IMG/VR virus record: IMGVR_UViG_3300019458_000021
Coordinates: 124,001-188,000 of that record
Reading direction: 5' to 3' (one strand)
DNA: 64,000 nucleotides
The position numbers and the translations under genes were made by a program. Positions 45,611 through 52,374 of this stretch are shown here, in pieces. Under the pieces are notes generated by a model that saw only the letters and a list, made by a program, of their open reading frames with translations, searched no databases and was not told the DNA's origin. The first letter of the stretch is position 1, and every line of letters begins with the position of its first letter.

Positions 45611-46717
45611 ATGGGAAATAGTTTAGGGTTTCTCGACGACTTTAACAAAGAACTCGAGGAAATGGAAGGTGTTGGCACATCTTCAAAACCACCACGTTAT
45701 TGGTACTCAACTGGTAACTTCGTTCTCAACAAGATCATCTCTGGCAGTTTCGCCAAAGGTATCCCACAAGGACGTGTGACGAATCTTGCTGGACCATCAG
45801 GTGCTGGTAAGAGTTTCGTTGCAGCAAACATTGTTCGTGAAGCACAGCGTCGAGGTGCGATTACACTGGTTATCGACAGTGAGAATGCGCTTGATGACGA
45901 CTTCATGGGCAAGATCGGTGTAAACACCGATCGTTCAACAAAGAAGTACTTCTATGCGGGTGTGGTCACCGTTCAAGATGTAACGCGTGTGTTCTCGAAG
46001 TTCATGAACGCATACAAAGAATCGTGTGCGGAAGATCCAGAAAATGGTCAGGAAATTCTGATCGTTTTAGATAGCATCGACATGCTGCTGACTGAAACAG
46101 AGCAAGAAAACTACGACAAAGGTGTACAGAAAGGCGACCAAGGTCAGAAGAACAGGCAGACGAAAAAGCTACTGAAAACAATGGTTCAAGACATCAAGCC
46201 GTACAACGTAGCTGTGGTTGTAACATCACAGGTCTATCGTAACCAAGATTTGTTAAATGGTGAAGGTCTTTGGATCATCAGTGAAGCGGTGAAGTTCTCT
46301 GCGTCACAGATCATCATGCTGACAAAGCTCAAACTGAAGGAAGCGGGCGAATCAATTGTCCACGGCATTCGTATGAAGTGTGAAGGTTACAAAACACGAT
46401 TTACTAAGCCGTATCAAACAGTGACAATCGAAGTTCCGTATGATACTGGGATGGATCCATACTCCGGTCTTATCGAAACTGCAGTCGAAATGGGTGTGGT
46501 TGAGACGAAGGGCTCGCGGTACGTGATCGACGGCGAAGACGAATCATGGTATAAAAAGGATGTTGCAGCCGTTGCTGATCGAATCTTGGTCAAGGCGGAG
46601 GCAAAAACAGAAGCATATCTTAAAGCTCGTATTGATGAGGCGATGGAAGCTGAAGAGGATGGTGAGTCGAAAGACGACACAGCAACACGCCGTCGCTTGA
46701 AGAGGGCAAAAAAATGA
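45611..46717 (+). CDS. uvsX: RecA-like recombinase
   Basis: WYSTGNFVLN, GPSGAGKS Walker A, IDSENALD, LDSIDML, SR/KTRFTKPYQTVTIEVPYDTGMDPYSGL. Confidence 0.92.
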   Translation: MGNSLGFLDDFNKELEEMEGVGTSSKPPRYWYSTGNFVLNKIISGSFAKGIPQGRVTNLAGPSGAGKSFVAANIVREAQRRGAITLVIDSENALDDDFMGKIGVNTDRSTKKYFYAGVVTVQDVTRVFSKFMNAYKESCAEDPENGQEILIVLDSIDMLLTETEQENYDKGVQKGDQGQKNRQTKKLLKTMVQDIKPYNVAVVVTSQVYRNQDLLNGEGLWIISEAVKFSASQIIMLTKLKLKEAGESIVHGIRMKCEGYKTRFTKPYQTVTIEVPYDTGMDPYSGLIETAVEMGVVETKGSRYVIDGEDESWYKKDVAAVADRILVKAEAKTEAYLKARIDEAMEAEEDGESKDDTATRRRLKRAKK

Positions 46718-46908
46718 AGGCGAGCCAACTACCAGCGTATAAAATCATCACATCGTTAAGCTACGACCTTGATAGGTTGACAGCAGCCGTCAATCAATTT
46801 GTTGCAGAGACGCCTGGTCAGTGGATCTGTGTTGGCCCTCCGTTCCAAGCATCGATAGCGGCCGGTGAGCACCGCGGCATGGCACAAGCGTTGGAGCGAA
46901 AAGATTGA
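46714..46908 (+). CDS. small protein, DUF1737-like
   Basis: 64 aa; ATGA overlap; AVNQF..W.CVGPPF..QAL. Confidence 0.5.
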   Translation: MKASQLPAYKIITSLSYDLDRLTAAVNQFVAETPGQWICVGPPFQASIAAGEHRGMAQALERKD

Positions 46909-46959
46909 CCTTTAATCCAAAATAGTGGACGGTAGTCCGTTCCTTATTAGGAGCTTAAC

Positions 46960-47350
46960 ATGTTCGATAGAAAGAAGCAACGATTGAAGTGGGGAAGGGC
47001 AAACGGCGCGCCATCGCGAAAGTCGGACGTGATAGACGAAAGCAAGAAATGCCTATTCCAGACATGATTCGACGATCGAAGTTTCGTGCTAAACGATTAG
47101 GGTTAGAATTTAATTTATCTGTAGAGGAGTTAACATTACCTTCTTTGTGCCCAGTGTTAGGCATTCCATTATTTTTACATATGGAAAGATCACTCCTAAC
47201 ACACCATCTCAATTGATAGGATTGATAGTTCGCGTGGATATGTGAGTGGGAATTGTCGAATTATCAGCTCACGAGCAAACACTCTTAAAAATGATGCAAC
47301 TGTTACGGAAATGACATTGATTCTTGAAGACCTCAAAAGGATAAACAATG
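46960..47350 (+). pseudogene. degenerate HNH endonuclease (about three frameshifts), same family as 14753
   Basis: SD TAGGAG plus ATG 46960; pieces in different frames: AKRLGLEFNL..CPVLGIPL / TYGKITPNTPS / IDRIDSSRGYVSGNCRIISSRANTLKNDA. Confidence 0.75.
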
Positions 47351-47881
47351 GAAATCTACGACGCACAAGAACTGGCGCAGAGGAATTTGATTGTAAAGCA
47401 CTACGCTGGATCACATGCATACGGTACAGCTCTGCCTACATCCGACATTGACTTTCGCGGAATTTTTGTCGCTCAGCCTGTCAACGTTCGGACACCTTTC
47501 TTTCCAATCACGGAAGTTGAAGTGTCGACTGAACAAGATACAAAACTGTACGAGTTGGCAAACTTCATGAAGCTTGTTGTTGACTGCAACCCGAACGTTG
47601 TTGAAACATTGTGGGTTGCAGATCGCGACATTGTATTCCGTACTCCTGCATACGATTTGCTTCGTAGGCACGCGCCCGATCTGTTGTGTTCGAAGATTGC
47701 TTTCACAACGAGTGGCTATGCCTTGGCACAGTTGAAACGGATCAAGGGACATAACAAATGGATTACACAGGCTGATAAAGGTATAAAAAAACTGCGTCAT
47801 GCTTTCAAGATGAGTGAAATAGATTACAAATGGCTTGAAGAACATTTTGATGAAACAATCGTTAAACGAGTGGTTGAGTAA
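47348..47881 (+). CDS. DNA pol beta-superfamily nucleotidyltransferase, N-terminal half
   Basis: AGSHAYGTALPTSDIDFRGIF (GS..DxD), CNPNVVETLW, GYALAQLKRIKGHNKW. Confidence 0.9.
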   Translation: MEIYDAQELAQRNLIVKHYAGSHAYGTALPTSDIDFRGIFVAQPVNVRTPFFPITEVEVSTEQDTKLYELANFMKLVVDCNPNVVETLWVADRDIVFRTPAYDLLRRHAPDLLCSKIAFTTSGYALAQLKRIKGHNKWITQADKGIKKLRHAFKMSEIDYKWLEEHFDETIVKRVVE

Positions 47882-48006
47882 TGTTTTACGTTTATGGTCT
47901 AATCGATAGTTTCACCAATAAAGTTTTCTATGTTGGTAAGGGCTGCAAAGATACCATCGGAAACACGAGAGAAAATTCGTGCAACACTCAAAAGGAAAGC
48001 AAATGA
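47881..48006 (+). pseudogene. GIY-YIG endonuclease stub between the nucleotidyltransferase halves
   Basis: MFYVYGLIDSFTNKVFYVGKG, plus out-of-frame PSETREKIRATLKRK (NUMOD3-like); TAATG and ATGA couplings on either side. Confidence 0.7.
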
Positions 48007-49802
48007 GCAGAGACACTTTACTTAATGATCCTGACGTGATGTTGCTTTGTAAACATTCTCCACGTCAAATTGACTTTGTCTCATTGGTGCACAACTTTAC
48101 GCCTGAAAAACGGTTTAAGGTTGACCTTAGTGAGTTCCACAAAGGCTACCGATTGGTACCATTTGCAGCGGACACATATGGTGTATACGAATCTGCCAAT
48201 CATGAAACGTTCACGGAAAGCGACGGAACGTTGAACACCGTGTATGAAGGTAATACACACGAGTTGGGTTCACCGTTGATGATTGTTAAATTCAACAAAG
48301 ACGTCTATCTGAGTGCAAAGGAAAAATGGAGTCAATATTGGACGTGGAAGAGAGAACGAAACGTTGTACGAAACGCTTTGGAAGAGCAATTTGGATATGA
48401 TTGTTATACTGACGATACAGAGTTTCTTACGAACGATGGTTGGAAAAAGTTTGATGAGGTGTCAGAAACGGACACTCTCGCTACTTTCAATCCATTATCT
48501 CATAAGGTTGAATATCAAACGCCGAGAGAACGAATTGAAGGAACGTTTACCGGAAATCTGTATCATTTTACAGGCCAACACGTAGACGTATGTGTTACAC
48601 CAAATCATAAAATGTACATAAGAGAGTTTTCACGGACGCTTGACAAACATGTGAGTGATTGGTCATTTGTTGATGCAGCGTTTGTTCCGGAATGTTTTGA
48701 TACACTTCACACCATAGTACCGAAAAAAGCGCGACAGAATTTGCCCAAAGGATTCACTAAAGCAATCTTAGATTACATTCCACTGCACTCCTACTTACGA
48801 GTCTTGGGATGGTACATTAGTGACGGAAGTTGCTCCTTTCAACCGAACGGTTGCGTTTCATGTGTATCGATTTCACAATCGAAACCACAATCGCGATTGA
48901 CACAAAACCTGACTCGCCAACGTAAACTCAACAAAATAAAATGTACGGAGAAGGTATACGAGGCAAAAGGAATAGCAAACTTTCCTGAAAAGCGTTGGTT
49001 TTTCGATCAAAAACTGTCCACAATGATATACGAAGATTGTGGACATGGTAGTCATCAAAAGCGAATTCCTCAATGGTGCTTTGAGTTGACACAGCGTGAG
49101 ATGAACATACTCCTTACGTGCTTGTTGCAAGGCGACGGAACAAAAAAGAACCATCAAGAAGAAACTTATGTTTATTATACAATCAATGCAGCACTTGCTG
49201 ACGATGTACAACGATTGGCCTTTTTGTGTGGGTTTGAAACATCAAAATGGGGTCCTTATTATTCGTCAACGTTGTTTGATGATAATCTGGAAATGTACCA
49301 AGTGCATATAAACAAGAAAGCGTCTAATACAAAAAGAACTTATCGTAGTAACAATAATATTCAAACAATACCCGTTGTAAATCAAAGAATTGTTTGTTTT
49401 ATGACTTCCAACCACACTCTTGTTACACGAAGAAACGGAAAAATAGCACTCCACTCGAATTCAAAGCATGCAATGCACTTGGTTCGCTTGCTTCGCATGG
49501 GCGTGGAAGCTCTAACTGAAGGCAAGATCATCGTTCGTCGTCCAGACGCAAAAGAACTGTTGGAGATCAGAGCTGGTTCGTGGACTTATGAGCAGGTGGT
49601 GGAGTACGCTGAAAAGATGGACGTCATGGTCCGTGAACAGCTATATCCAACAACCAGCTTGCCTAAGAAGCCGAACTACAAACTTGCGGCACAGTTGACG
49701 ATTGAGGTTCAAGACATGATGTGGAACCGAACCATTCGCACAATGAGTGAAGAGGAGAAGTTTCTGATCGTTGGCAACCAACAATACAGGATCACAGACT
49801 AA
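48003..49802 (+). CDS. nucleotidyltransferase C-terminal half containing an intein
   Basis: PRQIDFVSLV, W..YW.WKRERN..R..LEEQFGYD|intein|SKHAMHLVRLLRMG.E.L..G.I.VRRPDA.ELLEIR.G. Confidence 0.85.
   Translation: MSRDTLLNDPDVMLLCKHSPRQIDFVSLVHNFTPEKRFKVDLSEFHKGYRLVPFAADTYGVYESANHETFTESDGTLNTVYEGNTHELGSPLMIVKFNKDVYLSAKEKWSQYWTWKRERNVVRNALEEQFGYDCYTDDTEFLTNDGWKKFDEVSETDTLATFNPLSHKVEYQTPRERIEGTFTGNLYHFTGQHVDVCVTPNHKMYIREFSRTLDKHVSDWSFVDAAFVPECFDTLHTIVPKKARQNLPKGFTKAILDYIPLHSYLRVLGWYISDGSCSFQPNGCVSCVSISQSKPQSRLTQNLTRQRKLNKIKCTEKVYEAKGIANFPEKRWFFDQKLSTMIYEDCGHGSHQKRIPQWCFELTQREMNILLTCLLQGDGTKKNHQEETYVYYTINAALADDVQRLAFLCGFETSKWGPYYSSTLFDDNLEMYQVHINKKASNTKRTYRSNNNIQTIPVVNQRIVCFMTSNHTLVTRRNGKIALHSNSKHAMHLVRLLRMGVEALTEGKIIVRRPDAKELLEIRAGSWTYEQVVEYAEKMDVMVREQLYPTTSLPKKPNYKLAAQLTIEVQDMMWNRTIRTMSEEEKFLIVGNQQYRITD
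48402..49460 (+). mobile_element. intein (353 aa) with LAGLIDADG-type endonuclease domain
   Basis: Begins CYTDDTEFLT..GWK; block B VTPNHKM; LGWYISDGS and LLQGDGT motifs; ends HTLVTRRNGKIALHSN before +1 Ser; removal restores GYD-SKHAMH. Confidence 0.92.
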
Positions 49803-50375
49803 ATGATCGACGAAGAACTAGAAAAAGAAATCATACAGTTACTGCAGTTGTTTGAACAGCGAGAACAATTATTCACCGTTGGCACAGGAAAAATCATCGA
49901 GAAACTCGGTCCAACTGTTCTCGCTGCACTTTACGAGTTCTTCAACGTCTCGTATGACGCAATTTCGTGGCTGTTGATCGACGTCAATGACGGCACATTG
50001 ATGATAGGTGCTGTTGTCTCGTATAAAAACACCGATTTGGTGCCGGAGGCAATCAATCGCTTGTCACCTATGACAGGTGAAGTACCAGAAGAAGGAAACC
50101 TAACCGAGGTTCAACGTCTGATGCGAATTGGTATTCCCTTGGCAATGGTGTTCCAGCCAAAAGAAGAGATTGTTCGTTTTCTCAACAGCCGCGTTGCTCA
50201 ACAAGCAACGCCAGAGGCTCCAACTCCAACTGTGTTCGTCAACAAAGCAACGGGCGAAGTGCTTGAAGCGAAACAAAAACCCGAAGAAAGCGATTTCGAC
50301 AACAGTAAGCTTTCACGTGAGCAACTCGCCTCGTTACTCCAATCTCAACATCTGATCAAGGGAACAAAACACTAA
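49803..50375 (+). CDS. hypothetical protein
   Basis: 190 aa ORF in a coupled operon. Confidence 0.7.
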   Translation: MIDEELEKEIIQLLQLFEQREQLFTVGTGKIIEKLGPTVLAALYEFFNVSYDAISWLLIDVNDGTLMIGAVVSYKNTDLVPEAINRLSPMTGEVPEEGNLTEVQRLMRIGIPLAMVFQPKEEIVRFLNSRVAQQATPEAPTPTVFVNKATGEVLEAKQKPEESDFDNSKLSREQLASLLQSQHLIKGTKH

Positions 50376-50854
50376 TGGCAGATCCAACAAACATATTCCA
50401 AAAACTCGAACCAAAAGACAGTATAGCGTTTCGCCTGCTTCTTGAACGACACGTGCAACTGGAAGAAGAGTACGACCTTGCTCGGCAGAGCTTAACATTC
50501 AAAGGTAAGACGCTAGCGCAGGCAAACAATGATCAAGCCGAATGGCCGATCTACGTTGACGAACGACTTTCCGAACTTAAAACAATCTGTAAACGACTAG
50601 AAACCGTTGTGGATATGGTTCGGGGAAACATTGTTCGGCAGCTCAAGGGTGGCAGTGGGCTTGATTTAGGTCGCGACCTCACTCGCTACGTTGACCGTGA
50701 CGACAAGTTCCTTGATGCTCAGGAACGATTCCTGATGTTTGACGAACTCCGTGAAAAGTATGCAGCACTTTCCGAAGCATGGACCACAAGGGGGTATGCT
50801 TTGAAGAACAGAGTGGACATGTTGGTACATCAGGTAAAAGACAACCTGTTATAA
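50375..50854 (+). CDS. recombination mediator (UvsY-like)
   Basis: Helical 159 aa protein with YVDRDD, directly upstream of UvsW. Confidence 0.65.
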   Translation: MADPTNIFQKLEPKDSIAFRLLLERHVQLEEEYDLARQSLTFKGKTLAQANNDQAEWPIYVDERLSELKTICKRLETVVDMVRGNIVRQLKGGSGLDLGRDLTRYVDRDDKFLDAQERFLMFDELREKYAALSEAWTTRGYALKNRVDMLVHQVKDNLL

Positions 50855-50856
50855 AC

Positions 50857-52374
50857 ATGCAAATACGAATAAGGATACTGAATGAAGTATACGTTGTTGT
50901 TCTGGATCTTCTACCAGAGCACGTCGATTACTTCTACGAAAAATACGCTGTTCATGCGCCGAACTACTTCTTCAATCCGCGCTACAAACTAGGCCAGTGG
51001 GACGGTAAGATTCGCTTCTTTCACAAGACGGGCAAGACATACTTGTACCTGTTGGAAGACCTCTTGCCGCGTATCGTCAATCTTGGCTACAAGGTCGTCT
51101 TAGAAGACCTGCGTGACAACGTTCTGGTTGCAGCCGACGAAATCGATGCTGACTTGTTTAACGCCGTAAAGCATCCTGACACAGGTGAAGCTACGGTACT
51201 TCGCGAACATCAGGTTGCAGCTGTAAATTCACTTATCCGAGAAGGTTTTGGTACAGTGATAGCATCAACCGGATCTGGCAAAACTCTAATGTGTGCTGCG
51301 TTGTGTTATCAGTATGATAAGTTTGGATTGAAGTCGTTAACAATCGTTCCAAACAAGGACTTGATTCGTCAAACACGCCAAACATACATTCATTACGGAC
51401 TCGACACAGGCGAATATAGCGGCGAACGAAAGACACTTGGACATCAACACGTTGTTTCAACGTGGCAAGCACTTAAGAATGCACCGGAAGTGATCACGAT
51501 GTTCAACATTGTCATCGTCGATGAGGCGCATGGTTTGAAAGGCAATGTCCTGTCAACAATCCTGACCGACCATGCTGCAAAGGTCCCGTATCGCTTTGGT
51601 TTCACTGGTACGCTGCCAAAGGACAAATCTGATGCTTGGGCTGTTCATGTGGCCGTTGGTCCAGTCCGCTACCAAGTTCCAGCTTTTGAACTGATCGAGA
51701 AGGGACTTCTTGCCAAGATCAATATTGATGTGGTCCAACTGACTGAAGATCTGACTGAAGAGTACGACCAATTCATTGCCGACACACCAAACATTCCCAA
51801 TAATGAGCAGCCGACGTATGCAGAGTTCAAAGAAGGCTACTTTCCAGACTTTACAGCTGAGAAGTCATACTTGCAACACAAGGAAGACCGGATCACATAT
51901 CTTGCGCAGTATATTGAAGCAAAGCGGGATGCAAAAAGGGGAAACGTTCTCTGTCTCATAGACAACATTGCATTTGGTCGAAAACTCGCTGCAGAAATCA
52001 ATGGAGCTATTTTCGTCAATGGTAAGGATGTTAGATCAACGAAGGAACGAAAACAGATCTATGACTTGTTTGCTTCTCACGACGATCTTGTCGTGATTGC
52101 TACGGTCCACATTGCAGGAACTGGCATTGACATTCACCGCATCTTCAACCTAATGTTAATCGATATTGGAAAATCATTCATTCGAGTGATCCAAGCAATT
52201 GGTCGAGGACTGCGCATGGCAGAAGACAAGGATAGCGTTCACATCTCTGATTTGACGAGCGATTTAAAGTACAGTCGCAAACATATGCGAGAGCGAATAA
52301 AGTTCTACAAAGAAGCTCAATACCCTCATAAGCTACACAAAATCAACTACTCGAAGCTTGTCCTCGAGGACTAA
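50857..52374 (+). CDS. uvsW: SF2 DNA helicase
   Basis: FFNPRYKLGQWDGKI, LREHQ, STGSGKT, VDEAH, GFTGT, QAIGRGLR; ATG 50857. Confidence 0.92.
   Translation: MQIRIRILNEVYVVVLDLLPEHVDYFYEKYAVHAPNYFFNPRYKLGQWDGKIRFFHKTGKTYLYLLEDLLPRIVNLGYKVVLEDLRDNVLVAADEIDADLFNAVKHPDTGEATVLREHQVAAVNSLIREGFGTVIASTGSGKTLMCAALCYQYDKFGLKSLTIVPNKDLIRQTRQTYIHYGLDTGEYSGERKTLGHQHVVSTWQALKNAPEVITMFNIVIVDEAHGLKGNVLSTILTDHAAKVPYRFGFTGTLPKDKSDAWAVHVAVGPVRYQVPAFELIEKGLLAKINIDVVQLTEDLTEEYDQFIADTPNIPNNEQPTYAEFKEGYFPDFTAEKSYLQHKEDRITYLAQYIEAKRDAKRGNVLCLIDNIAFGRKLAAEINGAIFVNGKDVRSTKERKQIYDLFASHDDLVVIATVHIAGTGIDIHRIFNLMLIDIGKSFIRVIQAIGRGLRMAEDKDSVHISDLTSDLKYSRKHMRERIKFYKEAQYPHKLHKINYSKLVLED

What the first reader, a model, noticed from the sequence alone, without database searches (positions are those of the whole stretch)
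47348..49802. Nucleotidyltransferase invaded twice: split into two genes by an endonuclease remnant and carrying an intein
Seen: the catalytic GS/DxD half (47348-47881) ends with a novel tail after GHNKW. A 41-codon GIY-YIG stub follows (TAATG overlap). The second half starts by ATGA overlap at 48003 with a novel leader before PRQIDFVSL and holds a 353 aa intein. Established: an endonuclease splitting an essential gene into two complementing polypeptides is known for phage Aeh1 nrdA/mobE. Inference: the enzyme works as a heterodimer whose new terminal extensions may aid assembly, and it also needs protein splicing. RNA-level splicing of the roughly 300 nt insert is an alternative.
Basis: partly seen in the sequence, partly recalled or inferred. 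Interest (0 to 1): 0.7.

Follow-up and report, generated by a model that had tools for sequence, protein, structure and literature searches.

The report
Twice-invaded, split phage RNA-repair nucleotidyltransferase
A T4-like phage from a cave metagenome carries its RlaP/NrdC.11-type nucleotidyltransferase gene as two separate genes, split by the decayed stump of a homing endonuclease gene and also interrupted by an intein; each kind of invasion is already known, and the split form turns out to be common in uncultured relatives.

Summary
The N half is 47348-47881 (177 aa, GS/DxD). A 41-codon GIY-YIG stub is 47881-48006. The C half is 48003-49802 (599 aa) and holds a 353-aa intein (48402-49460). 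About 60 distinct relatives have one uninterrupted gene. At least 12 other metagenomic phages are split at exactly this point, with an intact endonuclease gene between the halves, and 44 protein clusters are N halves that carry the tail. The "novel" tail and leader are therefore not novel. They are conserved in all split alleles, are predicted helical, and probably match an internal segment of jumbo-phage homologs. The unit that is present or absent is tail + endonuclease + leader versus a 6-aa linker, and it is scattered on the gene tree (at least 6 changes). Only the window's lineage (four assemblies) has the GIY-YIG gene reduced to a stump. The stump keeps the stop/start overlaps and the ribosome site of the C half. 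The intein sits at the same GYD|(T/S/C)KH site as the known nucleotidyltransferase inteins of cluster C1 mycobacteriophages and of coliphage TH47. Both halves keep 48 of 48 residues that are invariant in unsplit homologs, so the gene is very likely functional. No intron signal was found. Assembly of the halves and protein splicing remain inferred. This is a new member of a known kind.

The parts
46989..47347 (+). Upstream HNH homing-endonuclease pseudogene, a third, decayed mobile element that abuts the nucleotidyltransferase start.
   Evidence: phrog_3322 endonuclease matches lie in two different frames. The homologous protein sequence continues across three reading frames. Sibling contigs and run X2 lack 47007-47256.
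47348..47881 (+). Nucleotidyltransferase N half, 177 aa. Residues 1-141 are the Pol-beta catalytic domain (47348-47770; G21 S22, D33, D35, D64, invariant RIKGHNKWI). Residues 142-177 are the tail (47771-47878).
   Evidence: PF10127 at 39.1 bits against a cut-off of 23, and phrog_388 E 1.8e-36. All invariant residues are kept. In the model the tail extends the long helix to residue 154 and adds two short helices, with pLDDT 88-95.
47881..48025 (+). GIY-YIG homing-endonuclease remnant. The 41-codon stub ORF is 47881-48006. Its first 24 codons (47881-47952) are the true N-terminus. The last NUMOD3-like module (about 47951-48025) survives in another frame. About 170-175 of about 220 codons are lost, including the catalytic core.
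   Evidence: BLASTP to the L006 endonuclease gives 18/24 identical, E 1e-10. tblastn to L115 gives 78% identity, E 3e-12. The 3' module matches in frame 3 with E 0.004-0.01. PF22945 scores only 15.7 bits against a cut-off of 27.
47992..48005 (+). Shine-Dalgarno-like AAGGAAAG (47992-47999) and the ATG of the C half (48003-48005), both inside the 3' end of the endonuclease remnant. The ATG overlaps the stub's TGA.
   Evidence: Read directly from the sequence. L006 has the same AAAGGAAA-n-ATGA arrangement inside the 3' end of its intact endonuclease gene.
48003..48401 (+). C half, N-extein (133 aa). The leader is residues 1-19 (48003-48059). The conserved core from PRQIDF onward is the beta-rich middle domain.
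   Evidence: Alignment to unsplit homologs. The leader is conserved among split alleles, consensus L.DPD[IV].LL.K..P.Q.
48402..49460 (+). Intein, 353 aa. It has Cys1, block B TPNH (48597-48608), LAGLIDADG motifs LGWYISDGS (48804-48830) and LLQGDGTKK (49122-49148), block F (49392-49439), terminal HSN, and +1 Ser at 49461.
   Evidence: It is absent from about 60 homologs at GYD|TKHAMH. It is 54-63% identical to inteins at the same site in L010, L049 and L063, 48% to TH47 and 32% to mycobacteriophage Cali gp3. It matches PDB 6zgq, the AceL NrdHF intein, at E 1.4e-4.
49461..49802 (+). C-extein (113 aa plus stop), the C-terminal helical domain. Conserved K, H, H and R residues lie just after the intein site.
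   Evidence: phrog_388 profile positions 234-342. Invariant residues are kept. The model of unsplit homolog L009 has pLDDT 93.5.
48392..48532 (+). Gene-conversion tract shared with the intein of a co-occurring phage (L010).
   Evidence: There are 2 mismatches in 141 nt, against 63-74% identity in the flanks. A separate 141-nt unitig has higher depth in both runs.

Best explanation
The locus is the RlaP-family (PF10127, T4 NrdC.11-like) nucleotidyltransferase of a T4-like phage, lying between uvsX and uvsW. Two independent selfish elements have interrupted it.

1. A free-standing GIY-YIG homing-endonuclease block replaced the 6-aa interdomain linker that follows the invariant RIKGHNKWI helix. 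The block is a 36-aa tail, a stop codon, the endonuclease gene, a ribosome site with a start codon, and a 19-aa leader. It turned one gene into two. In this lineage the endonuclease gene later lost about 80% of its length. Only its two ends remain. Those ends carry the stop/start overlaps and the ribosome site and start codon of the downstream half, so the gene stays in pieces although the endonuclease is dead.

2. A class-1 intein with a LAGLIDADG endonuclease sits in the conserved GYD|(S/T)KH motif of the C-terminal helical domain. This is the same site as in known phage nucleotidyltransferase inteins.

The inferred working order is as follows. One mRNA carries the N half (20 kDa), the 41-codon stub and the C-half precursor (599 aa). 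The intein excises itself and leaves a 246-aa C half. The two polypeptides then associate across the normal interdomain interface to rebuild the active-site cleft. By family-level evidence, the enzyme adds nucleotides to the 3' ends of damaged RNA.

Shown here: the anatomy, the homologies, the intact state of both halves and of the intein's catalytic residues, the spread of the split form, and its patchy distribution. Inferred: translation coupling, protein splicing, association of the halves, and enzyme activity.
For: - Unsplit state in relatives: about 60 distinct loci join N-half residue 141 to C-half residue 20 through 15-30 nt in one frame.
- Same split point with intact endonuclease genes: L006, L055, L087, L088/89, L090/91, L096, L097, L114 and L115-117 carry a 191-224 aa GIY-YIG gene with NUMOD3 motifs. 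L092/93 and L098-100 carry a different 340-aa endonuclease-like ORF.
- Spread: 44 clusters (90% identity) of half-size N halves end in a tail.
- Stub homology: E 1e-10 to 3e-12 for the first 24 codons, and the last module survives in another frame.
- Indel boundaries: in L087 versus L009, DNA homology stops at GHNKWI and resumes at P.Q.DF.
- Patchy distribution: the split state needs at least 6 changes on the core-extein tree, with split/short sister pairs at 99% SH-aLRT support.
- Function retained: the window's halves keep 48 of 48 residues invariant in 48 unsplit homologs.
- Site of the split: in the L009 model (pLDDT 93.5) it is the loop 142-151 between helix 119-141 and the beta domain.
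- Tail structure: the tail is predicted to be structured helices.
- Intein: same site and homology in L010, L049, L063, TH47 and Cali gp3. Nucleotidyltransferase inteins are documented in 23 cluster C1 mycobacteriophages, and a non-His penultimate residue is compatible with splicing (PMC5050341).
- Family function and architecture: the N-terminal nucleotidyltransferase domain and C-terminal helical domain form the cleft, and the last helix packs on the N domain (PMC12776372).
- Precedents for functional split enzymes: Aeh1 nrdA/mobE and phage 25 gp43A/B (PMC2988022).
Against: - There is no transcript, protein or activity data. No RNA run could be listed.
- The complex prediction gave no verdict.
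- The LAGLIDADG Pfam match is below the cut-off (16.8 against 22.5 bits).
- The penultimate intein residue is Ser, not His.
- The nearest comparators are only 53-75% identical, so recent loss of function could not be detected by comparison. The four near-identical assemblies differ at 2 sites in the gene, too few to measure selection.
- The direction of change (gain of the block versus its loss) cannot be read from the unrooted tree.
Confidence: 0.8

Rival explanations
1. The interruption between the halves is a degenerate group I intron carrying an endonuclease ORF remnant. It is removed from the mRNA, so a single polypeptide is made.
For: Phage GIY-YIG endonucleases are often intron-encoded (PMC2988022). 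About 290 nt are extra relative to short homologs.
Against: No Rfam family matches 46500-50500 even at E 1. The fold of 47771-48059 is not unusual (z -1.47). In L055 and other relatives the three ORFs abut by ATGA overlaps, which leaves no room for intron core helices. The tail and leader are conserved as protein across 44 clusters and are probably in-frame protein sequence in jumbo phages. The N and C halves are in different frames.
Confidence: 0.04
2. The nucleotidyltransferase is a dead gene. The split and the intein are stages of decay, and neither half functions.
For: Two neighbouring endonuclease genes (HNH 46989-47347 and the GIY-YIG stub) are visibly decaying. The family is probably dispensable in the laboratory (own knowledge of T4 nrdC.11).
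Against: The 177 + 599 codons have no stop or frameshift. All 48 invariant family residues are kept. The intein's Cys1, TxxH, terminal Asn and +1 Ser, and both LAGLIDADG acidic residues, are kept. The split form persists in lineages that are 45-69% identical, which implies long-term purifying selection.
Confidence: 0.08
3. The tail and leader are halves of a split intein. This would be a 'fractured gene', in which an endonuclease gene sits inside an intein and the halves are joined by trans-splicing into one polypeptide.
For: Exactly this gene order (half gene, free-standing endonuclease, half gene) defines the fractured genes of Dassa et al. 2009 (PMC2677866, abstract seen).
Against: The tail is 36 aa and the leader 19 aa, far below the size of intein halves. 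The tail starts with Ile-Thr-Gln, not Cys or Ser. The leader has no Asn-Cys/Ser/Thr junction. Jumbo-phage homologs appear to keep the equivalent segment inside the mature continuous protein.
Confidence: 0.02
4. The split is vertically inherited from one ancient invasion. The short unsplit alleles are all secondary precise losses, so the block is not currently mobile.
For: Split alleles are old (45-69% identical), and synteny is conserved.
Against: This would need at least 6 independent precise replacements by the same 6-aa linker. Two unrelated endonuclease types occupy the same site. Exchange of alleles by recombination between co-infecting phages, driven by the endonuclease, explains both gain and loss more simply.
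Confidence: 0.15

Closest known systems
Aeromonas phage Aeh1 nrdA-a / mobE / nrdA-b (Friedrich et al. 2007, as reviewed in PMC2988022)
   Same: A free-standing homing-endonuclease gene inside a conserved enzyme gene of a T4-like phage splits it into two ORFs. That split enzyme retains activity and no RNA splicing is involved.
   Different: The endonuclease here is GIY-YIG rather than HNH, and it is decayed to a 41-codon stump. The host gene is an RlaP nucleotidyltransferase. The split form is widespread and patchy, whereas Aeh1 is a single case. The C half also carries an intein.
Split DNA polymerase gene 43A/43B of Aeromonas phages 25 (seg43(25)) and 44RR (endonuclease-free intercistronic sequence), per PMC2988022
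   Same: One split point exists both with an endonuclease gene and with only a short non-endonuclease spacer. The halves co-purify and are active.
   Different: In the window the spacer is demonstrably the remnant of the endonuclease gene (both ends retained). For 44RR the origin of the spacer is unresolved.
Nucleotidyltransferase inteins of cluster C1 mycobacteriophages such as Cali gp3 (Kelley et al. 2016, PMC5050341) and of Escherichia virus TH47
   Same: The same extein family (PF10127) and the same insertion site, G[YW]D|[TSC]K. It is a class-1 intein with a LAGLIDADG domain ending H-(G/S)-N. Identity over the full length is 32-48%.
   Different: The host is a T4-like phage from a cave metagenome. 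The penultimate residue is Ser and the +1 residue is Ser. The extein gene is also split.
Pectobacterium phage CB7 selfish elements (PMC7344957)
   Same: Single genes are hit by two different element types: NrdA has an intein plus an intron, and NrdB has an intron plus an intein. Its NAMPT gene is split by an HNH gene that is not spliced out.
   Different: The host genes and endonuclease families differ. CB7 has RT-PCR evidence, and none exists here.
RlaP (PF10127) RNA-repair nucleotidyltransferases, PfRlaP/PaRlaP and T4 NrdC.11 (PMC12776372)
   Same: The family match is above the Pfam cut-off. There are three conserved acidic residues, and an N-terminal nucleotidyltransferase domain with a C-terminal helical domain forming the cleft.
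   Different: The phage clade has an extra beta-rich middle domain (model residues about 156-227). The activity of the phage enzyme is untested. The window's version is made of two polypeptides.

Membership tests
Genes-in-pieces made by a free-standing homing endonuclease (Aeh1 nrdA/mobE type) | The gene is continuous in related genomes that lack the endonuclease. | tested here: met
   About 60 distinct loci have one ORF with a 15-30 nt linker.
Genes-in-pieces made by a free-standing homing endonuclease (Aeh1 nrdA/mobE type) | A homing-endonuclease ORF lies between the two halves. | tested here: met
   The endonuclease is intact in at least 12 relatives. In the window only a remnant is left, homologous at E 1e-10 to 3e-12.
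Genes-in-pieces made by a free-standing homing endonuclease (Aeh1 nrdA/mobE type) | The insert is not removed from the RNA. | tested here: inconclusive
   There is no Rfam match, no unusual fold, and the ORFs overlap tightly. No RNA run could be listed.
Genes-in-pieces made by a free-standing homing endonuclease (Aeh1 nrdA/mobE type) | The two polypeptides assemble into an active enzyme. | not testable with these tools
   The complex prediction gave no verdict. The only indirect support is that 48 of 48 invariant residues are kept.
Class-1 intein with LAGLIDADG endonuclease | An in-frame insert, absent from homologs, lies in a conserved motif. | tested here: met
   The site is GYD|TKHAMH, with D263, K265, H266, H269 and R272 invariant around it.
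Class-1 intein with LAGLIDADG endonuclease | Cys/Ser at position 1, block B TxxH, C-terminal Asn, and a +1 Cys/Ser/Thr. | tested here: met
   The window has C1, T66-P-N-H69, N353 and S+1, all conserved in four homologs.
Class-1 intein with LAGLIDADG endonuclease | Penultimate His. | tested here: not met
   The residue is Ser in the window and Gly in relatives, Cali and TH47, with His at -3. Phage class-1 inteins with Gly, Ser or Lys at this position are known, and one was shown to splice (PMC5050341), so this feature is not strictly defining.
Class-1 intein with LAGLIDADG endonuclease | Homology to established inteins. | tested here: met
   The profile matches PDB 6zgq, the AceL NrdHF intein, at E 1.4e-4. 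The intein is 32% identical over its full length to the mycobacteriophage nucleotidyltransferase inteins. Intein-containing NCBIfam models match weakly.
Class-1 intein with LAGLIDADG endonuclease | Two LAGLIDADG motifs with acidic residues. | tested here: inconclusive
   The motifs LGWYISDGS and LLQGDGTKK are present, but PF14528 scores 16.8 bits, below the 22.5 cut-off.
Class-1 intein with LAGLIDADG endonuclease | Protein splicing occurs. | not testable with these tools
   This needs expression and a gel or mass spectrometry.
PF10127 RlaP / T4 NrdC.11-like nucleotidyltransferase | A family profile match above the curated cut-off, and the GS...DxD...D catalytic residues. | tested here: met
   PF10127 scores 39.1 against 23 bits. 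G21, S22, D33, D35 and D64 are invariant. The fold is nearest to Pol-beta nucleotidyltransferases such as ANT(4'), HalB and MNT, but only weakly.
PF10127 RlaP / T4 NrdC.11-like nucleotidyltransferase | Adds NMP to RNA 3'-OH. | not testable with these tools
   The activity is known for the Pseudomonas enzymes only (PMC12776372).
GIY-YIG homing endonuclease (the stub itself) | A complete catalytic domain of about 90 aa, including the conserved Arg, Glu and Asn after the GIY and YIG motifs. | tested here: not met
   Only 24 native codons remain. PF22945 scores 15.7 against 27 bits. The intact relatives pass at 33.8-47.2 bits. The stub is a remnant, not a working member.
Group I intron | A conserved catalytic RNA core. 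| tested here: not met
   There is no Rfam hit at E <= 1, and the fold z-score is -1.47.
Fractured gene with split intein (Dassa 2009) | The halves end and begin with split-intein parts bearing the splice-junction residues. | tested here: not met
   The tail is 36 aa and starts ITQ. The leader is 19 aa and has no N|C/S/T junction.

The most novel reading that the evidence does not exclude
The tail, endonuclease gene and leader together form a portable gene-splitting cassette. The endonuclease travels with two structured terminal extensions. These probably derive from the internal segment of long-form jumbo-phage homologs, or that segment is itself a healed scar of such a cassette. The extensions let the cassette replace the interdomain linker of a conserved enzyme without killing it. 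The cassette has been exchanged at least six times among T4-like phages, and two unrelated endonuclease types use homologous extensions at the same site. Once the cassette is in, the split is a ratchet: the endonuclease can die, as in this window, but its two ends must stay because they carry the translation signals of the halves.
Probability: 0.35. Interest if true: 0.6.

Novelty: new member of a known kind. Interest (0 to 1): 0.4.

Why it matters
The locus adds a well-populated natural example to the few known enzymes split by homing endonucleases (Aeh1 NrdA, T4 gp39/60, phage 25 gp43): dozens of lineages, two endonuclease types, and one decayed stump. It is the same enzyme family whose intein allele was already known from mycobacteriophages. 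Unsplit, split-with-live-endonuclease, split-with-dead-endonuclease and intein-bearing alleles all exist in related phages. The family is therefore a convenient natural series for three questions: how an enzyme tolerates being cut at an interdomain linker, whether the conserved tail and leader act as assembly aids, and why a split persists after the selfish element dies. For annotation, half-size RlaP ORFs next to small endonuclease genes in T4-like metagenomic contigs should be read as one functional gene, not as fragments.

Tried and rejected
- **Complex prediction.** The window N half was the partner, with the N-extein and C-extein as separate chains. The verdict was 'no answer', because one control (chain 1 replaced) scored as high as the real complex.
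- **RNA evidence.** No RNA run could be listed. Only two DNA runs from cave metagenomes hold the sequence.
- **Intron hypothesis.** The Rfam scan was negative and the fold z-score was not significant.
- **Near-identical phage isolates.** megablast against the phage collection found nothing. No isolate phage was found with the split form. The L006 endonuclease has only about 30% identical hits in isolates, and none lies in a nucleotidyltransferase gene.
- **Folding a long-form jumbo-phage homolog.** The aim was to see how the tail-like and leader-like segments pack.
- **Homology of the tail and leader to the jumbo-phage segment.** With the conserved flanks removed, hhalign gives only P 0.001 and 0.004, although at colinear positions. 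This is suggestive, not proven.
- **Co-conversion tracts next to the block.** In the sister pairs L087/L009 and L096/L029 no local change of identity is visible at 75-79% DNA identity.
- **Promoter and terminator scan.** Counts between the halves were at chance level.
- **Structure search for a close solved relative.** Only weak Pol-beta nucleotidyltransferase hits came back (E about 5e-3, TM about 0.3).
Full report
**Observation**

The window is part of a 237-kb IMG/VR virus record from a cave metagenome. The neighbourhood is T4-like: gp32, UvsX/RecA, the locus, two small ORFs, then UvsW. The Pfam labels come from the 99.9% identical contig L094.

- A 177-aa ORF (47348-47881) has G21-S22 and D33-x-D35.
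- Its TAA stop overlaps the ATG of a 41-codon ORF (47881-48006) that starts with a GIY...YIG motif.
- The TGA stop of that ORF overlaps the ATG at 48003 of a 599-aa ORF that ends at 49802.

Pfam and PHROG scans identify the two large ORFs as the front and back of one nucleotidyltransferase. PF10127 RlaP scores 39.1 bits against a cut-off of 23. phrog_388 matches profile positions 30-194 and 234-342. The same structure occurs in three other assemblies and in two sequencing runs, so it is real DNA.

**The split**

A scan of viral contigs plus phage isolates gave about 60 distinct relatives with a single ORF. In these, residue 141 of the N half (...RIKGHNKWI) is joined to residue 20 of the C half (P.Q.DF..LVHNF) by only 15-30 nt.

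Two viral contigs (L006, L055) are split at exactly this place. Each has an intact GIY-YIG/NUMOD3 endonuclease gene of 195 or 211 aa between the halves, partly with ATGA overlaps.

A length-restricted protein search returned 44 clusters of half-size N halves that end in a tail. Every context I fetched showed the same order: N half, endonuclease gene, C half.
- L087, L088/89, L090/91, L096, L097, L114 and L115-117 carry GIY-YIG genes of 191-224 aa.
- L092/93 and L098-100 carry an unrelated 340-aa endonuclease-like ORF with its own tail type.

Without an endonuclease gene the gene is whole. With one it is split.

**The stub**

The first 24 codons of the stub are 75-78% identical to the N-termini of the intact endonucleases (E 1e-10 to 3e-12). 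After that the stub ORF runs in a wrong frame. The last NUMOD3-like module of the endonuclease (IPSETREKIRATLKRKANEQ) survives in another frame up to 48025. About 170-175 of about 220 codons are gone, including the catalytic core.

What remains are the two ends of the gene. The 5' end abuts the stop codon of the N half. The 3' end contains the AAGGAAAG ribosome site (47992-47999) and the ATG of the C half. The same arrangement lies inside the intact L006 gene. I infer that these ends are retained because the C half cannot be translated without them. Among the 12 split lineages inspected, only the window's lineage has a decayed GIY-YIG gene. L099 has a truncated copy of the other endonuclease type.

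**Tail and leader**

These are not novel. The tail is conserved across the GIY-YIG-type split alleles, with consensus W[IL].Q.D.G..KL......I...WLE..F.E.[IV]...V. The second cassette type has a recognisably similar pattern. The leader is conserved too, with consensus L.DPD[IV].LL.K..P.Q.

A model of the window's N half, built with 40 homologs, predicts that the tail prolongs the long helix to residue 154 and adds two short helices, with pLDDT 88-95.

Jumbo-phage homologs (GAP32, CBB, XaC1, RaK2, TH47, EJP2) have a continuous 67-aa segment at this position. Its ends align colinearly with the tail and the leader. With the conserved flanks removed, the profile comparison is only weakly significant (P 0.001 and 0.004), so I call this homology probable.

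**Mobility**

On a tree of the core exteins (76 distinct rows; tail, leader and intein columns excluded) the split state needs 8 changes, at least 6 of them forced by well-supported branches. The sister pairs L087(split)/L009(short), L096/L029 and L091/L067 each have 99% SH-aLRT support.

In L087 versus L009, DNA homology stops at GHNKWI and resumes at P.Q.DF. The unit that is present or absent is therefore exactly tail + endonuclease + leader against a 6-7 aa linker. This fits allelic exchange by recombination between co-infecting phages, with the endonuclease driving gain. The direction of each change is not resolved.

**Where the cuts fall in the protein**

A confident model of the unsplit L009 protein (pLDDT 93.5) puts the split in the loop 142-151. 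That loop lies between the last helix of the N-terminal nucleotidyltransferase domain (119-141) and a beta-rich middle domain.

The intein site falls in the short turn between helices 251-260 and 264-283 of the C-terminal helical domain, amid invariant residues D263, K265, H266, H269 and R272.

The family's crystal structure is described as an N-terminal nucleotidyltransferase domain and a C-terminal helical domain forming the substrate cleft, with the last helix packing on N-domain helices (PMC12776372). This makes non-covalent reassembly plausible, and it means both halves are needed for activity.

**The intein**

The 353-aa insert (48402-49460) has:
- Cys1 and block B TPNH;
- two LAGLIDADG motifs with their acidic residues;
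- block F, a terminal Asn and a +1 Ser.

Homologous inteins, 54-63% identical, occupy the same site in the unsplit genes of L010/L011, L049 and L063. Others sit at the same site in Escherichia virus TH47 (48% identity) and in cluster C1 mycobacteriophages such as Cali gp3 (32% identity over the full length). Kelley et al. 2016 list 23 nucleotidyltransferase inteins in these mycobacteriophages.

The profile also matches a solved intein, PDB 6zgq, at E 1.4e-4. The penultimate residue is Ser here and Gly in relatives. Such phage inteins are known, and one with Gly splices well. The intein is therefore a new member of an already described intein allele.

**Is the gene alive?**

Both halves keep all 48 residues that are invariant in 48 unsplit homologs, as do L006, L055, L088 and L097. 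There are no stops or frameshifts. The split form persists in lineages only 45-69% identical to each other. This argues for long-term purifying selection on the two-piece enzyme.

**Alternatives**

- Intron: no Rfam hit at E <= 1, a fold z-score of -1.47, tight ORF overlaps in relatives, and protein-level conservation of the tail and leader.
- Split intein ('fractured gene', PMC2677866): the extensions are far too short and lack the junction residues.
- Pseudogene: contradicted by the retained residues.

**Not obtained**

- No RNA run could be listed.
- The complex prediction gave no verdict, so it counts neither way.

**Comparison and verdict**

The locus works like Aeh1 nrdA/mobE and the split gp43 of phages 25 and 44RR (PMC2988022). 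Like CB7's RNR genes (PMC7344957), it combines two kinds of selfish element in one gene. Its intein is the known nucleotidyltransferase allele.

Three things are new here. The first is the host gene of the split, an RlaP/NrdC.11-type enzyme. The second is the abundance and patchiness of the split allele together with its conserved tail and leader. The third is a clear case in which the endonuclease has died but the split persists.

The finding is a new member of a known kind and of moderate interest.

Noticed in passing
window 46989-47347: An HNH homing-endonuclease pseudogene (phrog_3322) lies directly upstream of the nucleotidyltransferase. Its homologous protein sequence continues across three reading frames. 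The near-identical sibling contigs L005, L094 and L095, and run X2, lack 47007-47256 (250 nt). The remnant is therefore being deleted within the population.
   Followed up: partly
window 48392-48532: A 141-nt tract across the N-extein/intein junction has 2 mismatches to the intein of L010. L010 is a different phage from the same IMG sample as the sibling contig L005. The flanks are only 63-74% identical. The tract forms a separate unitig with higher depth in both runs. This looks like recent gene conversion between the inteins of co-occurring phages.
   Followed up: partly
L092:4530-5552, L098:4600-5622, L100:2892-3914, L099:4600-5379: A second, unrelated 340-aa endonuclease-like ORF (weak HNH and homing-endonuclease PHROG hits) occupies the same split site. 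It has a different tail (KRLKQSKKKVNYLPDL...) and an altered GHNKW motif. About 13 N-half clusters are of this type. The L099 copy is truncated to 259 aa.
   Followed up: partly
L090:6396-8525, L091:4170-6299, L114:3191-4165: The downstream UvsW helicase carries an intein in some relatives, with LAGLIDADG_3 or Hint/Intein_splicing hits. The window's UvsW (50779-52374) does not.
   Followed up: no
own genome outside the window: G000:C1:104188-104526 (-) and G000:C1:102432-102641 (+): There is another GIY-YIG ORF in a 253-aa open frame, 41% identical to the N-terminal half of the L006 endonuclease. Nearby, a weak intein-like match lies inside a 651-aa open frame. The genome therefore holds further mobile elements.
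   Followed up: no
L003:1967-2986 (Vibrio phage 2.275.O, MG592671): In this isolate a 339-aa GIY-YIG domain protein abuts the start of an unsplit nucleotidyltransferase gene. This gene attracts endonucleases at its borders as well as inside.
   Followed up: no
L096:3490-4038: A different HNH-like ORF (182 aa) overlaps the start of the split nucleotidyltransferase in L096. It sits at the same position as the window's HNH pseudogene but is not homologous to it.
   Followed up: partly
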